From IMG/VR virus record IMGVR_UViG_3300033571_009404, positions 1 to 64,000 of that record: a stretch of DNA of 64,000 nt. One strand, 5' to 3'. Within the stretch, counting starts at the first letter, position 1, and each line of letters begins with the position of its first letter. The translations under genes were made by a program, and so were the position numbers. Below the pieces are notes generated by a model that was not told where the DNA came from, searched no databases, and worked only from the letters and a program-made list of their open reading frames with translations. This document shows positions 13,320 through 60,817 of this stretch, piece by piece.

Positions 13320-14183
13320 ATGCTGAAAGTTCAAGTCGATTACCACGATGATGCTTTGTTCGACAGCACAGACTTCGAGCCGAAGATCATTACTTTCCCT
13401 GGCGGGGAATGTCATGTGACTCTACCGGATGAATTGCTGGACAATCCACGTGCCCGTGCGTTTACCATTAAGACGCTGATCAAGAACGCCGACCACATCA
13501 TGCATTTGCTGATGGTTACAGACGCGATTCGTCGCCACTACGCGGGCTATCCGATTTTCCTACACATGCCGTACATTCCGTACGCACGTCAAGACCGCGT
13601 AGCCAACCACGGCGAGTCTTTGTCGGCTCGTGTGTTCTGTGATCTGATCAATGCTCAGAACTACGAAGTCGTCAGCGTCGCTGATCCGCACAGCCCGGTG
13701 GTGGAAGCGCTGCTGAACCGCATCGACGTGGTCGATCCGATTTACATGGTCGAAGAAGTGCTGCAAAGCGATCTCTTCAAGGACGGTGTGGCGCTGGTTG
13801 CACCGGACGCAGGTGCCCGAAAGCGTGTGCTGAATATGGCCATGGAAGTCAACGTCGAAGACGTGATCTTTGCTGACAAGGTACGCGATACCAAGACTGG
13901 CAAGATCACCGGTACCGTGGTCAACAACGAAGTTCCTCAAGGTAAAGCTATTCTGGTCGTGGATGACATCTGTGACGGTGGTCGTACCTTCCTGGAACTG
14001 GGTAAGGTCTTAAAGGAGAAGACCGACCAACCGCTGTACCTGTACATTACCCATGGCATCTTCAGCAAAGGTCTGGAAGAACTCGGTAAGTATTACGACC
14101 GTATCTTCACTGCCTACAACTGGAATGATGAAGAAGCCAACAATCCCCAACTGACCTTGATCAAGGAAGGAAATCTGCTGTGA
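13320..14183 (+). CDS. Ribose-phosphate pyrophosphokinase-like protein (probable ADPR-PP synthetase, Adps)
   Basis: FPGGE, PYIPYARQDR, DPHS, APDAGA and VDDICDGGRTF motifs; coupled to a Nampt-like gene. Confidence 0.9.
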   Translation: MLKVQVDYHDDALFDSTDFEPKIITFPGGECHVTLPDELLDNPRARAFTIKTLIKNADHIMHLLMVTDAIRRHYAGYPIFLHMPYIPYARQDRVANHGESLSARVFCDLINAQNYEVVSVADPHSPVVEALLNRIDVVDPIYMVEEVLQSDLFKDGVALVAPDAGARKRVLNMAMEVNVEDVIFADKVRDTKTGKITGTVVNNEVPQGKAILVVDDICDGGRTFLELGKVLKEKTDQPLYLYITHGIFSKGLEELGKYYDRIFTAYNWNDEEANNPQLTLIKEGNLL

Positions 14184-15883
14184 GCGAACAACAAGAAAAC
14201 ATCGTCGAGAAAGTTGCCAATGGTCTCGTGCCATTCAACCTGGCAGACTTCTACAAGACTGGTCACCCAGCCATGTATCCTCAGGGTACTGAAACCCTGG
14301 TGGCCAACTTTACCCCGCGCTCGGCCAAGTACGCTCCGGTACTGCCGGAATTGTTCGATAACAAGATCGTTTGGTTCGGCCTGCGTGGTTTCATCCAGGA
14401 ATGGCTGATCGATGTCTTCAATCGCGAGTTCTTCCAAAAACCCAAGGAAGAAGCCATCAAGAAGTACCGTCGTCGTATGGACACTTCTCTCGGTCCTGGT
14501 GCTGTCAGCATGAAGAAGCTGGAACTGCTCCATGATCTGGGTTACCTTCCGCTGGAAATTCGCGCCCTACCTGAAGGCGCTCGTGTGAACATCAAGGTAC
14601 CGCCGGTACTGTTCATCAACACCGCTGGCCCTGAACTGTCGTGGGTGGCTACCTACTTCGAAACTCTGATGTCCTGCGAAAGCTGGAAAATCTCGACGGT
14701 CGGTACCATTGCTTTCGAGTTCCACAAGCTGCTGACCTACTTCGCTGTGTCCACTGGCGCGCCTCTGGACTTTGTGCGTTGGCAAGGTCACGACTTCTCG
14801 TTCCGTGGCATGTCGGGTGTGCATGATGCAATGCGTACCTGCTCGGCTCACTTGCTGTCGTTCATGGGTACCGATACCATCCCGTCTATCGACTACCTGG
14901 AAGACTACTACGACGCCGATTCCGACAAGGAACTGGTGGGTGGTTCGATCCCAGCATCGGAACACAGTGTGATGGCTCTGCGCATTCTGCTGAAGCTGAA
15001 GGAACTGGCCAAGCTGCCGGAGAACGCAGGTCTGACTCACAAGCAACTACGTAAGGCAGCTGAGCTGGAAGTGGTGCGTGACTATGCCATCAAGGAATAC
15101 GACACTGGTCTGGTCTCCATGGTCTCGGATACCTTCGACTTCTGGAATGTGATCACTCACATCGCCAAGGTCCTGAAGCCTGAAATCATGCAACGCAAGC
15201 CGGATGTGTTCGGTAATGCCAAGGTCGTCTTCCGTCCTGATTCGGGTGATCCAGTGTACATCCTGACCGGTTACAAGAACAGTGAAATCGTTGCTAATGG
15301 CGATGGTACTTTCACTGTCAATGCAACTGGCAGAGTCATCCAAGATCACGAGCGTCGTGGTGCTGTGGAATGCCTGTGGGATATCTTCGGTGGTACCGAA
15401 ACCAGTCTCGGCTACAAGCTGCTGGATTCCCACGTCGGTCTGATCTACGGTGACTCGATCACTCTGCCGCGTGCTATGCGTATCCTGCGTCGTCTGCAAG
15501 ACAAGGGCTTCGCATCCACCAACGTAGTCTTCGGTATCGGTTCGTACACTTACAACATGCTCTCCCGTGACGTCTTCGGTTGGGCCATGAAGGCGGTGTA
15601 CGCGGTAGTCGATGGTGAGCCGGTTGAGATCTACAAGGATCCAGCAACTGACGACGGTATGAAGAAGTCGGCCAAGGGTCTGCTGCGTGTGGATAAGGTA
15701 GGTAACAACTACTTCCTGACGGAGAACTGCACCCCGGAAGAGTTCGAAGGCGGTGAACTCAAGCCGGTGTTCCGTAATGGTGAGATGTTGGTCAAGCCTA
15801 CCTTTAAGGAAGCCAAGGAACGTCTGCACCTTTCTTGGACGTGTCCGGAACCTAATAGCATCGTCTGGCAAGACGCTGCTTAA
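14180..15883 (+). CDS. Nicotinamide phosphoribosyltransferase-like protein (probable Namat)
   Basis: DFYKTGH, HDFSFRG, PASEHSV, VSDTFD, RPDSGDP, LIYGDSIT, KDPATD and KKSAKG motifs; GTGA overlap. Confidence 0.92.
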   Translation: MSEQQENIVEKVANGLVPFNLADFYKTGHPAMYPQGTETLVANFTPRSAKYAPVLPELFDNKIVWFGLRGFIQEWLIDVFNREFFQKPKEEAIKKYRRRMDTSLGPGAVSMKKLELLHDLGYLPLEIRALPEGARVNIKVPPVLFINTAGPELSWVATYFETLMSCESWKISTVGTIAFEFHKLLTYFAVSTGAPLDFVRWQGHDFSFRGMSGVHDAMRTCSAHLLSFMGTDTIPSIDYLEDYYDADSDKELVGGSIPASEHSVMALRILLKLKELAKLPENAGLTHKQLRKAAELEVVRDYAIKEYDTGLVSMVSDTFDFWNVITHIAKVLKPEIMQRKPDVFGNAKVVFRPDSGDPVYILTGYKNSEIVANGDGTFTVNATGRVIQDHERRGAVECLWDIFGGTETSLGYKLLDSHVGLIYGDSITLPRAMRILRRLQDKGFASTNVVFGIGSYTYNMLSRDVFGWAMKAVYAVVDGEPVEIYKDPATDDGMKKSAKGLLRVDKVGNNYFLTENCTPEEFEGGELKPVFRNGEMLVKPTFKEAKERLHLSWTCPEPNSIVWQDAA

Positions 15884-27482: not shown

Positions 27483-27866
27483 ATGCAATTCGAAAGCATG
27501 GTCAGGAAGCCTGAAGAAATCATTCCAGGGAATATTCTCTGGCGGGTTCAAGTCACTCTGAATGAAGACGGTAGCGTAAATGTTGCCGCCCCATACAAAG
27601 TGATTCCTCGCACTGAAGCTAAGCAACTGTCGGATACTCAATATTTCGTCGGTATCCGTAACGTCATGGGCGGATTCATTATCCCTCTCGCCCTGGACGC
27701 ATTTGCTGTTGGTCACAGTGAGGATTCAGATGAGTTTCGGTTCACTCATTCCCGGTTGTTCCGCAAACGTAAGGATGCGATCAACTACGGGCGTGAGATG
27801 CAATCCTATCAACCTCCCTTAGAAGAAATGAAGTATCATTTCACCATCAAAGGAGATGAAAAGTGA
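27483..27866 (+). CDS. Hypothetical protein
   Basis: AAGGAG SD. Confidence 0.75.
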   Translation: MQFESMVRKPEEIIPGNILWRVQVTLNEDGSVNVAAPYKVIPRTEAKQLSDTQYFVGIRNVMGGFIIPLALDAFAVGHSEDSDEFRFTHSRLFRKRKDAINYGREMQSYQPPLEEMKYHFTIKGDEK

Positions 27867-29566
27867 AAGCACCGAAACCCAAGTCAGAACCCATCAAGGA
27901 TTTCATGACAATGGCGCAAGTCATTGGCAAAGACACCCTGCCTGAAACATCCCAAAACAACAAGGAGCAACAAGCTATGCAAATGCAATCGAATGTGAAC
28001 ATCATCGACACCGACTTCGTCAACCGCGACTGGCTGTGCCGTATCGATCCTGATGCCGAGATGCAAGCCAACATCGTGAATCTGATGGCAGACCGCCGTC
28101 CGTTCACGGTCAAGGAAATCGGCGACGTCTTCGAATTCTTCGGCGACGCTGGTGATCGTGTGAAGTCCGCGCATGTCATGCTGCAGATGAATGCCAAGGG
28201 TTTCTTCAAGACCGTCTCCGGTGGCAACATCGAGATGTACATCCTGAAGGATCGTTTGCCTGGCATGGATCGCCCGAAGCAACCGAAGCTGTTCCGTACT
28301 CCTGATTACTTCGATCGTGATCCGATCGGCGAGATCAAGCGTGCTGATGGCGTCGACATGGCGATCTTCAAGATCCTGTTGTCCGATGGCGAAAAGCGCA
28401 CCGCACAAGAACTGCGTGCTCTGCTCTATCCCTTCGGCTTCACGGCTAATGAAATCTCTGGCAAGCTGAAGACCCTGATGCTGGGGTCCAGTGGCGATGT
28501 CTGGATCGAACGCATCCAACGTGGTTCCGATGTCTGGTACACGGTCAAGAAGGGCTGGAACCTGGCTCGCTTCATCAAGGCACGCAAGGGCAAGCCATCC
28601 GTCGTTTACACGGGTGACGAGCCGGAACTGCCTGCAGCAAAGATCGATGACAAGCAAGAGTCTCTGACTCCGGCAGTCACCGGTCGTGCTGGTACGCACG
28701 TGTCTGTCAGCGAAGTTCAAGCTGCATCTCAGGAGGAAGCTGTGGAAACCAACCAAGTCGACCTGGTCGTGACTGCCAAGGACACGATGGATCAAGCGAT
28801 CTGGAAGGTTACGCAAGACCGCGCAACCTACCTGGTCTCTGAAGTCGCTGCTCTGATCGAAGACTTCGGCTTCAACAAGGGCACTGTCGGTGTGCGCATG
28901 GCCAAGCTGGCTGAAATGGGTTGGTTCACGCGTACTCCTGAGGGTCGTGCTTTCAAGTACACCATGGTGGAAGGTACTGCTTTCCCTATGGCGCAACTTG
29001 AAGTGGTCAAGCCGACTTCGCAAGTTCAGTCTGAACCTGCTGAAGGTAACAAGGTCGAAACCAAGGCACAAGAAGCCATCGTCACCACCAAGGCCGGTCC
29101 GAAGGTCGTGGCTCTGGATGAAGTCCAGAAACCGCGTATCAGCGTGACCGAACTGGCTCAAGAACTGGATGTGACGCCTACTGGCCTGATGTTCTACATC
29201 AAGTCGCGCGGTTTCACCGGTGTCCTGGACATCGATACCCAGTTGACCATCGAACACGCTGCTGCATTGCGTGTTAACTTCAACAAGAACGATGCAAAGG
29301 AAATCGATATGGGTACTGTCACCAATCTGGCAGATGCAGTGAAGAACGACCAAGAACAACCGGCTCTGTTCACCATGATCGTCCAGATCAAGGGTGTGAA
29401 CTTCAGCCTGGTTGAACTGAAGGAACTGACTGTGGAACTGGACGAAGCCATTTCGTTCCTGACCAAGGTCAAGTCCCTGGATGCGAAGATCACCATCAAG
29501 ACCATCCCGCTGTCGCTGGATGAAATGAAGGAACTCGCAGAACGCATCCGCGAACTGAAGCTGTAA
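27863..29566 (+). CDS. Multi-domain nucleic-acid-binding protein: three winged-helix-like repeats plus an IF2_N-like domain
   Basis: Repeats of form D.AI.K...D......E...L...GF....; RISVTELAQELDVTP; alternative start ATG 27977 has an AAGGAG SD. Confidence 0.7.
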   Translation: MKAPKPKSEPIKDFMTMAQVIGKDTLPETSQNNKEQQAMQMQSNVNIIDTDFVNRDWLCRIDPDAEMQANIVNLMADRRPFTVKEIGDVFEFFGDAGDRVKSAHVMLQMNAKGFFKTVSGGNIEMYILKDRLPGMDRPKQPKLFRTPDYFDRDPIGEIKRADGVDMAIFKILLSDGEKRTAQELRALLYPFGFTANEISGKLKTLMLGSSGDVWIERIQRGSDVWYTVKKGWNLARFIKARKGKPSVVYTGDEPELPAAKIDDKQESLTPAVTGRAGTHVSVSEVQAASQEEAVETNQVDLVVTAKDTMDQAIWKVTQDRATYLVSEVAALIEDFGFNKGTVGVRMAKLAEMGWFTRTPEGRAFKYTMVEGTAFPMAQLEVVKPTSQVQSEPAEGNKVETKAQEAIVTTKAGPKVVALDEVQKPRISVTELAQELDVTPTGLMFYIKSRGFTGVLDIDTQLTIEHAAALRVNFNKNDAKEIDMGTVTNLADAVKNDQEQPALFTMIVQIKGVNFSLVELKELTVELDEAISFLTKVKSLDAKITIKTIPLSLDEMKELAERIRELKL

Positions 29567-39346: not shown

Positions 39347-39349
39347 TTG

Positions 39350-39922
39350 ATGGCGAACTTCACCAAGGTGAGGGAGGGTGTCTACATCGTCCGTACACAG
39401 GCTGGCTTCAGACGAGCCTTTAAGGACTGGGATGGTGGTAGCTCAGATAACCTGAGTGAATCATTACGTCGTATGTCCGGATATCCAAAGTCGTACCCGT
39501 CCTTGGTGATGTTTTCCTATGGCGGGCGTGACTGGGATCCATACCCGGTATGTACAGACGTGCACGTCAACGTGTTGCAAGGAGCGATTGTTGAATCTGA
39601 GCAACAACAGCGTATTAAGTTAGGATTACCTGTGGAAAAGACCAAAGAAGAATTAGCAGCTGAAGTACATCAGTTGCGCAAAGAGAATCAACTGATGCAT
39701 TATCGCATGGCTGCGCTGGAACTCAAAGCCAAGCAGTACAAGATGCATTATGAGTCCGCTAACAAGGCTCGTCTGAAAGCAGATGATTTCCGGGCAGAGA
39801 CATGGTCTGGATTGAATGCGTCCGTGGACAAAGCCTATAGCGAAATCAAGAATGATCCGAGTATGCTGAGCGCGACCTTTGTTGAACTGAAAGAACGTAT
39901 CGTTTCGTTGTTTAGCAAGTGA
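39350..39922 (+). CDS. Hypothetical protein with coiled coil
   Basis: AAGGAG SD. Confidence 0.75.
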   Translation: MANFTKVREGVYIVRTQAGFRRAFKDWDGGSSDNLSESLRRMSGYPKSYPSLVMFSYGGRDWDPYPVCTDVHVNVLQGAIVESEQQQRIKLGLPVEKTKEELAAEVHQLRKENQLMHYRMAALELKAKQYKMHYESANKARLKADDFRAETWSGLNASVDKAYSEIKNDPSMLSATFVELKERIVSLFSK

Positions 39923-41023: not shown

Positions 41024-41363
41024 AGGTGAGCACGTAGATAAACCGGTGGATGATAGATATTATCAGGCCAGACCGACGTTCTATTCCGGCATTGTCAATG
41101 AACGGACATCGGACGCCATGACCAGTCTGAAGTGTAATCTCATTGTCGCATTGATAAATGCTGGTGTTGTCGATGCGCGTGTTGGTATGGAACCCTGTGA
41201 ACTGAGCATCATTTTGAATGATACTCGTGTACGGGTTGAGATGAACAACTGGGGAATGAAGTCGACCTTTGAGATCGATATCAGTGAGCAGACCAAAGTG
41301 GCAGCGGCAAGAAGCGGCTCTATGGTCGATTCCCTCTCAATAGCTGCGATGAAATGTACCTAA
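41010..41363 (+). CDS. Hypothetical protein
   Basis: GAGGTG SD. Confidence 0.65.
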   Translation: MMPTEGEHVDKPVDDRYYQARPTFYSGIVNERTSDAMTSLKCNLIVALINAGVVDARVGMEPCELSIILNDTRVRVEMNNWGMKSTFEIDISEQTKVAAARSGSMVDSLSIAAMKCT

Positions 41364-41626
41364 CCCCTCTTGGTTGGGCAATTGTGTCAGGGGTGATCAT
41401 TCTGTTGATCACCCTGCTCTTGCTCATTGGCTATGGAATACATCGTTTCTTCCAGACCTTAAAAGAAATCTCCGAACACTTAGGTGAAGTCAGAGATGAA
41501 CTGGATCGGGCTGGAGATAAACTAGACAACTCTTTTAAATCTATCAAAGACGGTCTGGATGACTGTCAGTTGTCATTAAAAGAGATCGATACCACCTTAG
41601 ATGCTGAATATCGATTAAAAAGGTAA
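41354..41626 (+). CDS. Single-TM protein with coiled-coil tail
   Basis: WAIVSGVIILLITLLLLIGYGI then heptad repeats. Confidence 0.75.
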   Translation: MYLTPLGWAIVSGVIILLITLLLLIGYGIHRFFQTLKEISEHLGEVRDELDRAGDKLDNSFKSIKDGLDDCQLSLKEIDTTLDAEYRLKR

Positions 41627-41629
41627 ATC

Positions 41630-42241
41630 ATGCTGATCAAAAAGAATGACGACGGTTCATTTCAAGTACTGCTGGCTTATGAAGGTCAGACTATCGGTAA
41701 TCTCAAAGCAGTGGTGTCTGCTAAGGTCTTGGATGAAACTTATCTCGACTTCAAGACGGGTAAACGCCACTTCCAATCGGAACTGGATCATCCTCGCTAT
41801 AAGTTTGATCCGATGAAACAAGCGCAAGCAATCATCGATGATAACTTAGGTGATCCTCAGATGGAAGCGATGGAGCGCGCTATGACGATCAAGCTTGAGA
41901 ACGTCTGCGGTTACATCACTGACATGTTACTGCTTCGTCCTGAGTCTATCGGGATCGACATTCTGATTGGTACGTGGAAGTTCAACGGACCGATGAAAGA
42001 AGTAGCAGAGAAGTGCTATAAGGAAACAGGTGATGTGAAACTGTCTCTGCGTGCATTCTCCAATGGTACCGGTACCTGCAACGGTATTAATGTCGTCAAG
42101 GTCATCACCTGGGACTTCGTTGACCCCAACGAAAAGTACAAGCAGGATCTGTACGAGACGCTTGGCCAAGAGAAGGCAGATAGCCTGATTCGTTATCTGA
42201 ACAACGAACCCCTTACTCAACCGGATAATCATGCTGATTGA
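41630..42241 (+). CDS. S80/prohead-protease-like protein, probably degenerate
   Basis: SELDHP, IKLENVCGYI, NGP, LSLRA, VITWDFVDP. Confidence 0.65.
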   Translation: MLIKKNDDGSFQVLLAYEGQTIGNLKAVVSAKVLDETYLDFKTGKRHFQSELDHPRYKFDPMKQAQAIIDDNLGDPQMEAMERAMTIKLENVCGYITDMLLLRPESIGIDILIGTWKFNGPMKEVAEKCYKETGDVKLSLRAFSNGTGTCNGINVVKVITWDFVDPNEKYKQDLYETLGQEKADSLIRYLNNEPLTQPDNHAD

Positions 42242-42845
42242 AAAATACGACGATGGTTCATGTTTGGTTCTGCTGGCGTTTACCGAACAGATCATGAACA
42301 ACAATGCGATCCTGACGTATACGGCGATCGATAAACTGATGCAGCGTTATAATAACGAAGAATGTCGTCGCAGTCCGTTTTATACGGAATACGGTCATCC
42401 GCATCTGGATCGTCGGGATTACTATACAGATGAACTGGATGGTGAAGGTAAGGTATTGAACGACCGCCTATTCCAGTTCAACATGGATCGTGTTTGCGGG
42501 ATGATCGATGATCTGCATGTGGAGAAGCGCCCTAACCTGCGGCACATCTTGACCGGTGTTTGGTCACCCTATGGACCATATGCTTCTGAAGCAGCGAAGC
42601 TGATCCATGAAACAGGTCAAATCAAATTGGGTCCACGGTCACTGTGTGATTTGGTTTCCAATGGTAAAGGCGGTATGACTGGTACAGTAGCCAAACTCAT
42701 TGGTTGGGACTTCATGAACCCGTATGACCAATCCATCACTTCCATGGCTAAACTGGATACACACATCTGTCATCCTGTTCGCTACTGGATAGATGACAGT
42801 GCTCCTCCAGTCCCACTCCCAGAAAAACAACTCGAACTAGGTTGA
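42231..42845 (+). CDS. S80/prohead-protease-like protein, probably inactive
   Basis: YTEYGHP, NMDRVCGMI, PYGPY, LGPRS, LIGWDFMNP. Confidence 0.65.
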   Translation: MLIEKYDDGSCLVLLAFTEQIMNNNAILTYTAIDKLMQRYNNEECRRSPFYTEYGHPHLDRRDYYTDELDGEGKVLNDRLFQFNMDRVCGMIDDLHVEKRPNLRHILTGVWSPYGPYASEAAKLIHETGQIKLGPRSLCDLVSNGKGGMTGTVAKLIGWDFMNPYDQSITSMAKLDTHICHPVRYWIDDSAPPVPLPEKQLELG

Positions 42846-43117: not shown

Positions 43118-43729
43118 ATGCAGAAATTCCGTACCTTCCAGATGGTCACAACGAACCAAGCGTTGTCCTCTGTGAAGAACAACAACATCAAGCTACCAGC
43201 AGGTAGCGAGGTCATTGTCCGTAGGTTCGTCACTGGTGGGGTGTTTAACCATTACGAAGTCTTTGAAATTGAAGACTACGATCAAGAACGTCCCTTCCAA
43301 GCACAGACACACCAACTGGTTGAAAGTTACGTCAAAGGTAATTCAGCCATGCGTGTGTATCTGGCTGGACCGATGGCTGGTTACCCTGAGAATAACTACC
43401 CCGCATTCCATCGAGGAGCGGCGTGGCTGCGTTCTAAAGGCTACGAGGTAGTTTCTCCCGCCGAGATTAACTTCGACGCTCCTAAGCGCTATAAAGAGCT
43501 TGAGAGTAAATTCACAGGCGATGAACTGAGTCTTGAAAAACAAAGCATTGTCAATGAATGCCTGAAGAAAGACTTTGTTGAACTGTTGAGTTGTGAACTC
43601 ATTGTCAAGATGAAGGGTTGGCAAGAATCGACGGGTGTCAACAAAGAAATTGATCTGGGTAACTTTGTCGCTATTGGCAGCGTTGAGCTGAGTGAAATCA
43701 TGATGATCACCGACGGGGTGGTGACGTGA
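43118..43729 (+). CDS. DUF4406 (nucleoside deoxyribosyltransferase-like) domain protein with N-terminal extension
   Basis: RVYLAGPMAG...NYPAF...VSPAE...C...GWQESTG...E. Confidence 0.85.
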   Translation: MQKFRTFQMVTTNQALSSVKNNNIKLPAGSEVIVRRFVTGGVFNHYEVFEIEDYDQERPFQAQTHQLVESYVKGNSAMRVYLAGPMAGYPENNYPAFHRGAAWLRSKGYEVVSPAEINFDAPKRYKELESKFTGDELSLEKQSIVNECLKKDFVELLSCELIVKMKGWQESTGVNKEIDLGNFVAIGSVELSEIMMITDGVVT

Positions 43730-54610: not shown

Positions 54611-55390
54611 ATGAAAGTAAGTGACATCCCATCAACAATTGGCTGGGAAGTAGTTGTCAATGGTGGACGTGATCTGGGAATGGATACAGAGAAACGTAAA
54701 CTCATTGGGAAGACTTGTATCTTGATCAAGCAGTGCAAGAGCGGTCTCATGCAGATCAGTTACAAGGGTAATCTCTACAGTGTACCCTTGACTGCGCTGG
54801 ATGTCAAGTCAGACAATCCAGCATTAAACATCAGAAAACACAATCAAAGGAATAACATGACTCAAGACGTCATCACCAACGAAACAACCAAGGTTCGCCT
54901 GACCACCAACTTCGGTGAGATCCTGCTGGAACTCAACAATGCCGCTGCCCCGGAAACCGTCAAGAACTTCCTACAATACGTCAACGACAAGTTCTACGAC
55001 GGTACCATCTTCCATCGCGTCATCGACGGCTTCATGATCCAAGGTGGTGGTTACACCTCCATCACGAGCGAAAAGCACGTGCCCAAGGAAACCCGTGAAG
55101 CCATTCCGAACGAAGCCAAGAACGGTCTGAAGAACGAGCCTTACACCATCGCCATGGCACGTACCGCAGCACCTCAATCGGCTACGGCTCAGTTCTTCAT
55201 CAACGTGAAGAACAACAGCTTCCTGGACTATCCGGGTCAAGACGGTTGGGGTTACTGCGTCTTCGGTAAGGTGATCGACGGTGAGAAGACCATCGATCGT
55301 ATCAAGGCAGTCAAGACCGAACGCCGTGGCATGTTTGCTGACGTACCTGTGGATGAAGTTGTCATCCAGAAAGCCGAAGTGGTGGAATGA
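54611..55390 (+). CDS. Cyclophilin-type peptidyl-prolyl isomerase (core from ATG 54857) with N-terminal extra domain
   Basis: APETVKNF, FYDGTIFHRVIDGFMIQGGG, IAMART, SATAQFFIN, GYCVFGKV. Confidence 0.93.
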   Translation: MKVSDIPSTIGWEVVVNGGRDLGMDTEKRKLIGKTCILIKQCKSGLMQISYKGNLYSVPLTALDVKSDNPALNIRKHNQRNNMTQDVITNETTKVRLTTNFGEILLELNNAAAPETVKNFLQYVNDKFYDGTIFHRVIDGFMIQGGGYTSITSEKHVPKETREAIPNEAKNGLKNEPYTIAMARTAAPQSATAQFFINVKNNSFLDYPGQDGWGYCVFGKVIDGEKTIDRIKAVKTERRGMFADVPVDEVVIQKAEVVE

Positions 55391-57780: not shown

Positions 57781-58380
57781 ATGAAGCAAAGGAAACATAA
57801 ACGCCGTCTGTATGGTCGTATTCAATCTGACGCTATTGACTACTACAAGAATTACGACTGGGAAGCTTTCAAGAAAGTTGTAATGGATCGTAGTAAACAT
57901 ACCAAGCTTAGCTGGATAATCTTGGATGCGGAGTTTGCCGATAGTCAGCCGGAACACAAGAAGTGGCAGAGTCTAGCCGCTGAGTCTCTTAAGATTCATC
58001 GCAGGCAGATGTTCCGTAAACGCCGTCCTCGATTGAATATGGCATATGGCGGTCAATTCTCCATGACATCGATTCCCAATCCATTCCCTGATCCTCGTAG
58101 TCGTAGTAATCGTGATCTCGTGACGGTTGGTGAGATCACAGACTTCGATCCTAAGCCATTCATCGTCAAGGAACGTCATTTCATGCGGCGAGTAGCACCT
58201 GCTGCGTTAAAAGGAGAGCATAGCCATCCTGATGTGACTGAAGTCAAGATCGGCAATGGTGACAGGGAGTTCTATGCTGTTGATCCCGGCTCAGATAAAT
58301 GCATAGGTATGCGTGGGTTTATCGATGAGAATGGTCATTTACACCAGACCTCGTTCAATCTAGTCAATCCTGGGAAATAA
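57781..58380 (+). CDS. Basic hypothetical protein
   Basis: AAGGA SD; MKQRKHKRR. Confidence 0.7.
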   Translation: MKQRKHKRRLYGRIQSDAIDYYKNYDWEAFKKVVMDRSKHTKLSWIILDAEFADSQPEHKKWQSLAAESLKIHRRQMFRKRRPRLNMAYGGQFSMTSIPNPFPDPRSRSNRDLVTVGEITDFDPKPFIVKERHFMRRVAPAALKGEHSHPDVTEVKIGNGDREFYAVDPGSDKCIGMRGFIDENGHLHQTSFNLVNPGK

Positions 58381-58383
58381 ATT

Positions 58384-59145
58384 ATGGATGACGATAATGT
58401 CATGAAGCGTCTGACTAATGCATTACAGTCAGAAGAGATGCAAAAGAAGTTGAGGGAGATGCAATTGCGTTTTATGCCTACTTCCGAGATGACTCCAGAA
58501 GATGTAGAGAAAGCATTAAGACGTCGATTCAATGAATTGATCGGTACTGAACAAGGTTCGAGAATCGAGCTTGTTGCGGTTCATCCGGACTCCATTCGTG
58601 AGATGACGGTATCTATGGTTATGCCCCCTGAGGTTAAAGACTTGCTGTTTACCAAAATGGGCAATCTCCCTGCGGCCATTATGCCTCCGATCAAGATCCC
58701 TATGGTCAAACCTGAGAACTTCTCTCGTTCCGTCGAAGGGATTGAGCCTGATGAGATCTCTGGCTGGATCAGTAATGAGAACAACGGTGATGATGACTAT
58801 GTGGTCTTCGTTCGGCAGAAAGATTCCAAAGACTACTGGGATGATAAACCGCTAGCGGATCTCATGCGGGAGAAGTACTCAAATAAGTTAGTCACTATCC
58901 ATTACTGGACCTGTGACCGTGAGTTACCTCCTGAAGTCTTGAAGACAGCTGCCTTAGAACATATCTTCGGTATCACTGAAGCTGACTATCAAACGCACTA
59001 TTCGGATACGACCGGTTATCTCTGGTTGGATCAGGATATCAAGATTGGTGGTCACGATCTGTTAGAAGAACTACGTTCTCATGCAGGCAAGTATCTTTAC
59101 ATGGAGATCTTTGTACATGAACACCCGCCAATTAAAGCGGTATAA
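58384..59145 (+). CDS. Hypothetical protein
   Basis: YSDTTGYLW...IGGHDLLEEL module. Confidence 0.8.
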   Translation: MDDDNVMKRLTNALQSEEMQKKLREMQLRFMPTSEMTPEDVEKALRRRFNELIGTEQGSRIELVAVHPDSIREMTVSMVMPPEVKDLLFTKMGNLPAAIMPPIKIPMVKPENFSRSVEGIEPDEISGWISNENNGDDDYVVFVRQKDSKDYWDDKPLADLMREKYSNKLVTIHYWTCDRELPPEVLKTAALEHIFGITEADYQTHYSDTTGYLWLDQDIKIGGHDLLEELRSHAGKYLYMEIFVHEHPPIKAV

Positions 59146-59923: not shown

Positions 59924-60817
59924 ATGGCATCAATTGTCAATTACGAACAAGACCATAATTCATTCATGGCAGAGACTGTTGCGATGTTTGCCCATGAAGC
60001 AACTGGTCAACGTCGTGTTGTCTTTTCAGATGGTCAACGTGAAGAGGGTGATGAACCCTATTACAATCACCCGCTGCGTGTAGCTGGTGGTGTGCGTAAC
60101 TTCTTTAATACGGATGCCTGGAAGCGCATGAGCTTTGTCAACCATGACAAAGACAAACTTCGCTGGGCTGCTATTAATGCGGCCTATCTTCACGACGTTA
60201 TCGAAGACACCAAGATTAAGCGTGAGTATATCGAAGAGTATTTCGGTCTTACCACGATGACCATCGTCATGGGTTGTACTTCGGTGCTGTCAGATCGTAA
60301 GGATCTTCCCCGTGCAGTCAAGAAGGCAGTTAATCGTTGTCGTTTATTTAATGCCAGTCATGCACACGCATACGCACCCTTCATTTACCTGATCAAGACG
60401 GAAGACCATAGCGACAACTGGTTTAACAATAACCGGGATGACCTGAATAATCGCAGTCGTACTCTGACTGAGATCATCATCAATGTAGCGACTTACATCT
60501 GCGCATTACAACGTGGTCCTAACGACAGCGTGTTCCTGCAGGCATATCTGAACGGTGTCATCGATGGGATTATGTCAGACGCCGCTCAACTGGGTATTCA
60601 TCCTACCAGTGTGGCGACGCATTATGTCTCTATGATGGATCTCTGGGCTAAGGCTGGTAAAGACGACAACTTTACCTACAACCTGAAGTCACTCCCACAC
60701 GACTGGGCAAAGAGTATGGCTGACTACATGCCTGTAGTTGATCTTATTAAAGATAACTTAGAGCATCTGTTCTCGCGCTATGTTCGGATCTTCAATCACA
60801 AAAACGAAGCAGGATAA
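59924..60817 (+). CDS. RelA/SpoT-type HD-domain hydrolase (small alarmone hydrolase/Mesh1-like)
   Basis: AH...GQRR, EPYYNHPLRVA, AAYLHDVIEDT, IK..D..DN. Confidence 0.8.
   Translation: MASIVNYEQDHNSFMAETVAMFAHEATGQRRVVFSDGQREEGDEPYYNHPLRVAGGVRNFFNTDAWKRMSFVNHDKDKLRWAAINAAYLHDVIEDTKIKREYIEEYFGLTTMTIVMGCTSVLSDRKDLPRAVKKAVNRCRLFNASHAHAYAPFIYLIKTEDHSDNWFNNNRDDLNNRSRTLTEIIINVATYICALQRGPNDSVFLQAYLNGVIDGIMSDAAQLGIHPTSVATHYVSMMDLWAKAGKDDNFTYNLKSLPHDWAKSMADYMPVVDLIKDNLEHLFSRYVRIFNHKNEAG

What the first reader, a model, noticed from the sequence alone, without database searches (positions are those of the whole stretch)
41630..42845. Tandem prohead-protease (S80-like) paralogs with eroded catalytic residues, outside any head-gene cluster
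Seen: both proteins carry the ordered motifs ExxHP, (D/E)xVCGxI, GP, LxxR and WDFxxP, and share the start MLIxKxDDGSxxVLLA. Known (recalled): T4 gp21/phiKZ gp175-type proteases have the catalytic His in the VSH motif and Ser in the SxR motif. Here VSH reads VCG in both, and SxR is SLR in one and GPR in the other. Inference: pseudo-proteases, or Cys-altered variants, repurposed as substrate-binding regulators or as decoys for defences that sense or are activated by phage proteases.
Basis: partly seen in the sequence, partly recalled or inferred. Interest (0 to 1): 0.62.

Follow-up and report, generated by a model that had tools for sequence, protein, structure and literature searches.

The report
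Tandem prohead-protease paralogs in jumbo phage
Two adjacent genes of a 310-kb nucleus-forming jumbo phage encode extra, trimmed-down copies of the capsid-maturation protease. They belong to a paralog family first described in 2017 whose function is still unknown, and one copy keeps the full catalytic triad while the other has lost its serine.

Summary
ORFs 41630-42241 (A, 203 aa) and 42231-42845 (B, 204 aa) are 31% identical paralogs (E 7e-21). Both have the T4 gp21 / S80 prohead-protease fold (A: Z 12.4 to PDB 5JBL).

The phage's true maturation protease lies 134 kb away, at genome position 176298-177083, in the conserved virion-RNA-polymerase/head module.

The published triad (SPN3US gp245 H77/S153/D178; T4 gp21 H85/S140) uses the His of the ExxHP motif, not the "VSH/CxH" His. 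On that assignment A keeps the whole triad (H54, S139, D162). B keeps His and Asp but has Gly at the serine.

Both proteins lack the N-terminal extension and the C-terminal propeptide of canonical proteases, so they probably act outside the prohead.

They group with SPN3US gp117, 201phi2-1 gp206 and similar short proteins, the "diverged paralog of the prohead protease" of Ali et al. 2017. In that family most members have a broken triad. Thirteen of 29 related jumbo-phage records carry at least one such extra copy.

An orthologous A-B pair with the same 11-nt gene overlap exists in another metagenome and is under purifying selection (dN/dS 0.11 and 0.16).

Verdict: a new member of a known kind, with function still unknown.

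The parts
41630..42241 (+). Gene A: 203-aa S80/gp21-fold prohead-protease paralog with an intact His-Ser-Asp triad
   Evidence: ORF. Pfam PF20034 E 3.9e-7, above the cut-off. AF2 model pLDDT 92.2. T4 gp21 5JBL: Foldseek E 4e-4, prob 1.0; Z 12.4, rmsd 2.6 A over 132 residues. Ortholog at 77% identity, dN/dS 0.11.
41789..41791 (+). Codon of A His54 (ELDHP), the position of the catalytic His
   Evidence: Aligns with canonical H81, gp245 H77 and T4 gp21 H85.
41912..41914 (+). Codon of A Tyr95 (VCGY), replacing the second conserved His (CxH) of S80 proteases
   Evidence: Alignments. This His is not part of the published triad.
42044..42046 (+). Codon of A Ser139 (KLSLR), the retained nucleophile position
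   Evidence: Aligns with canonical S159 and gp245 S153.
42113..42115 (+). Codon of A Asp162 (TWDF), the third triad residue
   Evidence: Invariant column in the alignments; equals gp245 D178.
42231..42241 (+). 11-nt overlap of the stop of A with the start of B (ATGCTGATTGA)
   Evidence: An 11-nt overlap in the same position occurs in the orthologous pairs of L088 and L085; the L088 junction was read (ATGCTGCTTGA), the L085 one is known from gene coordinates only. No promoter-like site lies between the genes, and the only terminator-like match is a weak one inside gene B at 42634-42646, within a scan no richer than shuffled sequence.
42231..42845 (+). Gene B: 204-aa S80/gp21-fold paralog with Ser replaced by Gly
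   Evidence: ORF. Pfam PF20034 E 7.9e-4, below the cut-off. PHROG 7478 E 3e-10. AF2 pLDDT 82, tail 173-192 disordered. 5JBL Foldseek E 3e-4, prob 1.0. Ortholog at 78% identity, dN/dS 0.16.
42396..42398 (+). Codon of B His56 (EYGHP), the retained catalytic-His position
   Evidence: Alignments.
42630..42632 (+). Codon of B Gly134 (KLGPR) at the nucleophile position (Ser lost)
   Evidence: Alignments. The B-ortholog in L088 has Ala at this position.
42708..42710 (+). Codon of B Asp160 (GWDF), the retained third triad residue
   Evidence: Invariant column.

Best explanation
A and B are accessory paralogs of the phage's capsid-maturation protease. They belong to the gp117-like family of 'diverged prohead-protease paralogs' found in phiKZ-like (chimallin-encoding) jumbo phages.

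Shown:
- Both have the T4 gp21/assemblin fold.
- Both lack the ~25-residue N-terminal extension and the ~70-residue C-terminal region of canonical S80 proteases.
- The gene pair, with its 11-nt overlap, recurs in two other metagenomic contigs (L088, L085), and its L088 orthologs are under purifying selection.
- A keeps His54-Ser139-Asp162. B keeps His and Asp but has Gly at the serine.

Inferred: because the ends that target the real protease to the prohead and gate its activity are missing, A and B act outside the prohead core, in the infected cell. Most family members have lost Ser and/or His, yet they keep the Glu and Pro flanking the His, the Arg after the Ser, and the Asp. The family's common activity is therefore most likely non-catalytic binding of a peptide or protein ligand in the old active-site groove.

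A is the exception. It may still cleave, with B as a co-expressed dead partner or a second binding specificity. Substrate, partner and timing are unknown.
For: Homology and fold:
- paralog profile against canonical profile, 99.95% probability, E 1.6e-37.
- A model pLDDT 92, Z 12.4 to 5JBL, herpesvirus proteases next at Z 5-6.6.
- B matches 5JBL at E 3e-4.

The true protease is elsewhere. Genome position 176298-177083 scores 257 bits to PF20034. It lies in a module collinear with SPN3US gp240, gp241, gp244 and gp245.

Triad assignment: PMC5694885, direct counting on gp245 and T4 gp21, and hhalign.

Family membership:
- The paralog profile A3 finds SPN3US gp117 at E 1e-9.
- In the ML tree a starred branch (98) separates 57 mostly short, mostly triad-broken rows, including A, B and gp117, from 104 canonical rows that are all His-Ser-Asp.
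- The best BFVD fold matches are short uncharacterised proteins of 201phi2-1 (145 aa, the length Ali et al. give for gp206), Phabio, Psa21, Eowyn, RAY and fHe-Yen9-04.

Missing termini: alignments.

Conservation:
- The orthologous A-B pair in L088 has the same overlap. The A-type keeps His/Ser/Asp and the B-type has Ala at the Ser site. dN/dS is 0.11 and 0.16.
- A second tandem pair occurs in L085.
- 13 of 29 related jumbo-phage records have an extra S80-like locus.

The phage encodes a chimallin homologue.
Against: - No experiment or expression data bear on activity, localisation or partners.
- A lacks the second conserved His (CxH) present in 87 of the 104 canonical-clade rows (motif table). 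If that residue is needed in S80 enzymes, A is dead too.
- Retention of the triad in A rests on only two sequences, A and its 77%-identical ortholog. The positional counterpart in L085 has Gly at the Ser site.
- The A-B complex prediction gave no verdict.
- No gene neighbour is conserved across family members, so context gives no functional hint.
- The paralog 'clade' contains long branches and could be partly an attraction artefact of independent duplications (warnings).
Confidence: 0.6

Rival explanations
1. One reading: both A and B are catalytically dead pseudo-proteases. They act as substrate-binding regulators of head maturation, or as decoys or inhibitors for host defences that respond to the phage prohead protease.
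For: B has Gly at the nucleophile. In the tree 52 of the 57 paralog rows have a broken triad. Only one of the paralog rows (P0108) has His at the CxH position, which 87 of 104 canonical-clade rows keep, so A might be inactive despite its His/Ser/Asp. A type I CBASS screen reported the prohead protease as a determinant of activation and evasion (Richmond-Buccola et al. 2024, as cited in PMC13276650).
Against: A and its ortholog keep all three residues of the published triad. T4 gp21 works without any His at the CxH position. A look-alike of a trigger would more naturally activate a sensor than blind it. No defence-related neighbour was found, and nothing was tested experimentally.
Confidence: 0.25
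2. A and B are minor structural or assembly components of the prohead core (protease-fold scaffold-like proteins), incorporated by a route other than the canonical C-terminal region.
For: T4 gp21 is itself a pentameric core component (PMC9958956). Several BFVD fold matches carry names such as 'prohead core scaffold' or 'virion structural protein'.
Against: The region inferred to target the canonical enzyme into the prohead is absent (PMC5694885). The genes sit among small non-structural-looking genes 134 kb from the head module. In the passages of Ali et al. that I read, gp117 appears only as a sequence-search hit to the protease, not among the virion proteins discussed. I did not check their full virion table.
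Confidence: 0.08
3. The genes are decaying duplicates without function.
For: Loss of catalytic residues in B and in most of the family. Patchy distribution, 13 of 29 relatives.
Against: Both frames are open. The AF2 models are confident. dN/dS is 0.11 and 0.16 against orthologs at about 77% identity, with the gene overlap preserved. The family is widespread (547 profile hits at E<=1e-10).
Confidence: 0.04
4. A and/or B is the true head-maturation protease.
For: A has an intact triad and the protease fold.
Against: A canonical S80 protease scoring 257 bits lies in the head/virion-RNA-polymerase module collinear with SPN3US gp240, gp241, gp244 and gp245. A and B lack the C-terminal propeptide and fall outside the canonical clade.
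Confidence: 0.01

Closest known systems
SPN3US gp117 and kin: Erwinia phage Stratton gp135, Kwan gp144, 201phi2-1 gp206, PhiPA3 gp143. [quoted passage not shown] 2017, Front Microbiol 8:2251.
   Same: A second, diverged S80-like gene far from the protease gene. It is short because the C-terminal region is missing. It carries the 'RVCG(Y)' motif and keeps the Asp. Some phages have two copies. Function is unknown. My paralog profile retrieves gp117, and A/B group with it in the tree.
   Different: gp117 has no aligned catalytic His (EFDAP), whereas A and B both keep it and A keeps the whole triad. A and B are about 200 aa with their own ~40-aa tails, against about 135-160 aa. They form a tightly overlapped tandem pair with one triad-intact and one Ser-less member.
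phiKZ gp175 / SPN3US gp245, MEROPS S80 prohead protease (Pfam PF20034)
   Same: Same fold and the same ordered motifs. A has the same His/Ser/Asp triad positions.
   Different: A and B are only about 20% identical to the genome's own S80 enzyme. They lack the N-terminal ~25 residues, the CxH His and the auto-cleaved C-terminal propeptide. They lie outside the head module and outside the canonical clade.
T4 gp21 (PDB 5JBL)
   Same: It is the best structural match for both models (A: Z 12.4, rmsd 2.6 A over 132 residues). The His of ELNHP and the Ser of SxR correspond.
   Different: About 15% identity. T4 gp21 has an N-terminal blocking peptide and is a prohead-core pentamer. Nothing is known about the oligomeric state of A or B.
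Herpesvirus assemblin proteases (VZV, HCMV, KSHV; family S21)
   Same: Distantly the same fold (Z 4-6.6).
   Different: The third triad residue is His rather than Asp. There is no detectable sequence similarity.

Membership tests
Peptidase S80 (PF20034) prohead protease | Sequence match above the Pfam gathering score | tested here: inconclusive
   A scores 29.9 bits against a 23.4-bit cut-off (met). B scores 19.1 bits (not met alone). Profile-profile comparison of the paralog set with the canonical set gives 99.95%, E 1.6e-37.
Peptidase S80 (PF20034) prohead protease | gp21/assemblin fold | tested here: met
   A: Foldseek 5JBL E 4e-4, prob 1.0; VIA Z 12.4. B: 5JBL E 3e-4, prob 1.0.
Peptidase S80 (PF20034) prohead protease | Catalytic triad His (ExxHP), Ser (SxR), Asp ((W/F)D) | tested here: inconclusive
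   A: H54/S139/D162 all present. B: H56/G134/D160, Ser lost. The triad definition comes from PMC5694885, checked on gp245 and T4 gp21.
Peptidase S80 (PF20034) prohead protease | C-terminal propeptide that is auto-cleaved and inferred to target the enzyme to the prohead | tested here: not met
   The canonical C-terminal 'EPGI..A.K..SP.LES...W' region is absent from A and B. Its role is taken from PMC5694885 and PMC7411985.
Peptidase S80 (PF20034) prohead protease | Position in the conserved virion-RNA-polymerase beta / gp244-like / protease module | tested here: not met
   That module is at genome position 167498-177083 and holds the canonical gene. A and B are at 41.6-42.8 kb.
Peptidase S80 (PF20034) prohead protease | Proteolytic activity on head proteins at S/A/G-X-E sites | not testable with these tools
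   Requires biochemistry.
gp117-like prohead-protease paralogs (Ali et al. 2017) | Second, diverged S80 homologue in a genome that also has a canonical protease | tested here: met
gp117-like prohead-protease paralogs (Ali et al. 2017) | Lacks the 3' (C-terminal) part of the protease gene | tested here: met
   PMC5694885.
gp117-like prohead-protease paralogs (Ali et al. 2017) | Groups with gp117 and other short paralogs, apart from canonical proteases | tested here: met
   A starred branch (98) separates 57 paralog rows from the canonical clade. The A3 profile hits gp117 at E 1e-9. The best BFVD fold matches are the short paralogs. Caveat: long branches and a quick LG+G4 search.

The most novel reading that the evidence does not exclude
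A and B form an active/dead pair of non-capsid proteases. A, free of the N-terminal blocking peptide and the prohead-targeting tail, cleaves a phage or host protein in the cytoplasm of a nucleus-forming phage infection. B, which has Gly in place of Ser, acts as its specificity or regulatory subunit. This would give the gp117-like family its first function and would be a case of a capsid protease re-used outside the capsid.
Probability: 0.12. Interest if true: 0.6.

Novelty: new member of a known kind. Interest (0 to 1): 0.3.

Why it matters
Extra copies of the prohead protease are common in phiKZ-like jumbo phages: 13 of 29 relatives here, and many cultured phages by fold search. None has a known role. 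This locus adds an overlapped, conserved pair in which one member keeps the full catalytic triad and the other has lost the serine. That contrast makes it a convenient place to ask whether the family cleaves or only binds.

It also corrects a tempting misreading. The conserved CxH histidine of S80 enzymes is not the catalytic histidine.

Beyond this the finding is an ordinary accessory-gene duplication of a kind already described.

Tried and rejected
- GenBank phages, DNA and protein searches with the locus and with A: no match.
- Word-index protein search: only one relative of A and none of B.
- Pattern-based locus search with the 3-sequence alignment in IMG/VR: nothing.
- PDB sequence and profile searches with the canonical protease: only chance hits. 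The link to T4 gp21 had to be made by fold.
- Papers with the primary mutagenesis and structure data are not held: Thomas & Black 2013, Fokine & Rossmann 2016, Cheng et al. 2004, Thomas et al. 2012. The triad assignment therefore rests on Ali et al. 2017 plus my own residue counting and alignments.
- Gene-neighbourhood comparison with the paralog loci of FLC9 and Xoo-sp14: no shared neighbours.
- Complex prediction for A+B: no answer (score 0.01). This is not evidence either way.
- The mixture-model tree did not finish. The reported tree is the quick LG+G4 search.
- The paralog profile found no second copy in phiKZ or LucasX.
- Two equal-length 567-aa ORFs in the window looked like possible repeats but are unrelated.
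- Promoter/terminator scan: nothing above the shuffled expectation.
- Read laying and the look-up of sequencing runs were not used. No alternative genetic code was needed.

Full report
**What is there**

The window is the first 64 kb of a 310,114-bp IMG/VR virus record with direct terminal repeats, rated 100% complete. On the + strand, ORF A (41630-42241, 203 aa) and ORF B (42231-42845, 204 aa) overlap by 11 nt.

- A and B are 31% identical, E 7e-21.
- A matches Pfam Peptidase_S80 above the curated cut-off (E 3.9e-7, 29.9 vs 23.4 bits).
- B falls just below that cut-off (E 7.9e-4, 19.1 bits).
- Both hit PHROG head-maturation-protease families.
- The neighbours are small genes without family matches, plus a DUF4406 / nucleoside-2-deoxyribosyltransferase-like protein.
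- The sigma-70 promoter and terminator scans found no more sites than shuffled sequence. No promoter-like site lies between the two genes, and one weak terminator-like match lies inside gene B.

**The phage and its real protease**

A full-length S80 protease (261 aa, 257 bits) lies at genome position 176298-177083. It sits directly after homologues of SPN3US gp240, gp241 (virion RNA polymerase beta subunits) and gp244, in the same order as SPN3US gp240-gp245. This is therefore the maturation protease.

The genome also encodes a homologue of the phiKZ nuclear shell protein chimallin (26% identity, E 3.9e-26). Its protease is closest to those of Burkholderia phage FLC9, Xanthomonas phage LucasX and Ralstonia phages RP12/RP31, at 47-52% identity. 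It is thus a phiKZ-like, probably nucleus-forming jumbo phage.

**Fold**

With a 112-sequence alignment, AlphaFold2 gives A a mean pLDDT of 92.2 (pTM 0.84). B scores 82.0 (pTM 0.76) with a disordered tail at 173-192.

- Both models match T4 gp21 (5JBL) first: Foldseek E 3-4e-4, probability 1.0.
- For A, VIA-align gives Z 12.4, rmsd 2.6 A over 132 residues.
- Herpesvirus proteases come next at Z 4-6.6.

**Which residues are catalytic**

Ali et al. 2017 (PMC5694885) give the triad of the SPN3US protease gp245 as H77, S153, D178, aligned to the T4 gp21 triad. S153A abolishes auto-cleavage (PMC7411985).

I fetched gp245 and counted the residues:

- H77 is the His of 'EEDHP', the ExxHP motif.
- The 'VCMH' His is H104.
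- S153 is in 'CFSLR'.
- D178 is in 'TFDW'.

In T4 gp21, H85 lies in 'GELNHP' and S140 in 'VSSR', and there is no His at the CxH position. That H85 and S140 are the catalytic residues of gp21 is from my recollection of Cheng et al. 2004 and Fokine & Rossmann 2016, which I could not read here. hhalign places A's 'SELDHPR' on T4's 'GELNHPPRA'. The scores are weak (E 0.011 and 0.001) but the register is the same each time.

In the 104-row canonical clade of my tree, every row keeps the ExxHP His, the Ser and the Asp. The CxH His is replaced in 17 of them (motif table).

The consequences for the two proteins are:

- A has H54, S139 and D162, a complete triad.
- B has H56, G134 and D160, so the nucleophile is lost.
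- The CxH His is Tyr95 in A and Met in B.
- The Cys before it is shared with many canonical enzymes and is not a new feature.

**Relatives and family**

Ali et al. [quoted passage not shown] Their examples are SPN3US gp117, Erwinia phage proteins (two copies in some phages), 201phi2-1 gp206 (145 aa) and PhiPA3 gp143. They noted that the 3' part of the gene is missing and that Ser and Asp, but not His, align in gp117. gp117 itself reads '...RVCGY...ISPR...SFD'.

A profile of A, B and seven relatives from IMG/VR jumbo phages gave these results:

- It finds gp117 at E 1e-9. It also finds single extra copies in FLC9 (gp284, triad positions N/A/D) and Xoo-sp14 (gp75, S/S/D). It finds none in phiKZ or LucasX.
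- Against 1.84 billion representative proteins it finds 1207 proteins at E<=1e-3 and 547 at E<=1e-10.
- In an ML tree of 162 rows, a starred branch separates 104 canonical rows, all with His/Ser/Asp, from 57 mostly short rows. Of these 57, 52 have a broken triad. A, B and gp117 are on the short side.
- A pairs with P0002 (support 99). That pair is sister (support 83) to B plus two B-like proteins.
- The best BFVD fold matches of A are short uncharacterised proteins of 201phi2-1, Phabio (three copies), Psa21, Eowyn (two copies), RAY and fHe-Yen9-04.
- Among 29 related jumbo-phage records, all have the canonical gene and 13 have at least one extra S80-like locus.

**Conservation of the pair**

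A 933-bp JGI contig (L088) carries orthologs of both genes with an 11-nt overlap at the same junction (ATGCTGCTTGA there).

- The A-type ortholog (77% identity) keeps His/Ser/Asp.
- The B-type ortholog (78% identity) has Ala at the Ser site.
- dN/dS is 0.11 and 0.16.

A second contig (L085) has a similar overlapped pair in which both members lack Ser. A third (L083) has a single B-type gene between an HD-domain gene and a cyclophilin gene. No neighbour is shared across family members.

**Interpretation**

Identity is secure. These are gp117-like accessory paralogs of the prohead protease, not the maturation enzyme and not decaying pseudogenes.

Both lack the N-terminal ~25 residues of canonical S80 enzymes. 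In T4 gp21 the N-terminus blocks the active site until self-cleavage (PMC9958956). Both also lack the C-terminal propeptide inferred to carry the enzyme into the prohead. I infer from this that they work outside the prohead core.

The family at large has lost Ser and/or His but keeps Glu and Pro around the His, the Arg after the Ser, and the Asp (invariant columns). Its common activity is therefore probably binding rather than cleavage. A may be an exception that still cleaves, unless the missing CxH His is essential. B is dead as a serine protease.

Whether A and B associate is unknown; the complex prediction gave no verdict.

There is no support for it in this locus.

**Verdict**

The locus is a new member of a known kind with modest interest. 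The active-looking/dead pair makes it a reasonable entry point for finding the family's function.

No reads tools, alternative genetic codes or restricted sequences were involved.

Noticed in passing
window 57781-58380 (and 58153-58473): A 199-aa ORF carries a short stretch, 'FMRRVAPAALKGEHSHP', that resembles positions 46-105 of the S80 profile (E 0.0015, 15 bits). The match runs over the stop into the next ORF. The ORF alone has no Pfam hit. It may be a third, decayed remnant of a protease copy, or chance.
   Followed up: partly
window 14180-15883: A 567-aa protein with a nicotinamide/nicotinate phosphoribosyltransferase domain (PF04095, E 2.4e-35, plus a weak NAMPT_N match). It is an NAD-salvage gene in a slightly GC-richer stretch. 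The equal-length ORF at 27863-29566 is unrelated to it.
   Followed up: partly
window 43118-43729: A DUF4406 / nucleoside 2-deoxyribosyltransferase-like protein (Pfam E 4e-14; PHROG 355 E 6e-22), 270 nt downstream of gene B.
   Followed up: no
window 41354-41626: A 90-aa protein with an N-terminal hydrophobic segment and a coiled-coil-like remainder (weak DUF948 and MukF_M matches below their cut-offs). It ends 3 nt before gene A.
   Followed up: no
G000 219950-221752 (outside the window; L087): A homologue of the phiKZ nuclear shell protein gp54 (chimallin), 26% identity over residues 4-608, E 3.9e-26. The phage is probably nucleus-forming.
   Followed up: partly
L056, L057, L059 (IMG/VR relatives G011, G010, G012): Here the protease paralogs are 250-270 aa with a ~100-aa C-terminal extension. 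Each gene overlaps a downstream gene for a 294-aa protein (347 aa as the longest ORF in L056) with an N-terminal signal-peptide-like segment. The L057 copy matches the NMT1_3 (TAXI-like) solute-binding family (E 2e-8). G012 also has a tandem pair of paralogs (273 and 194 aa).
   Followed up: partly
L083 (JGI 3300050193 contig): A relative with shuffled gene order. Its B-type paralog lies between an HD_4 gene and a cyclophilin gene. The homologues of those genes in this window are at 59924-60817 and 54611-55390. L083 4071-4643 matches window 39347-39922 (38% identity).
   Followed up: partly
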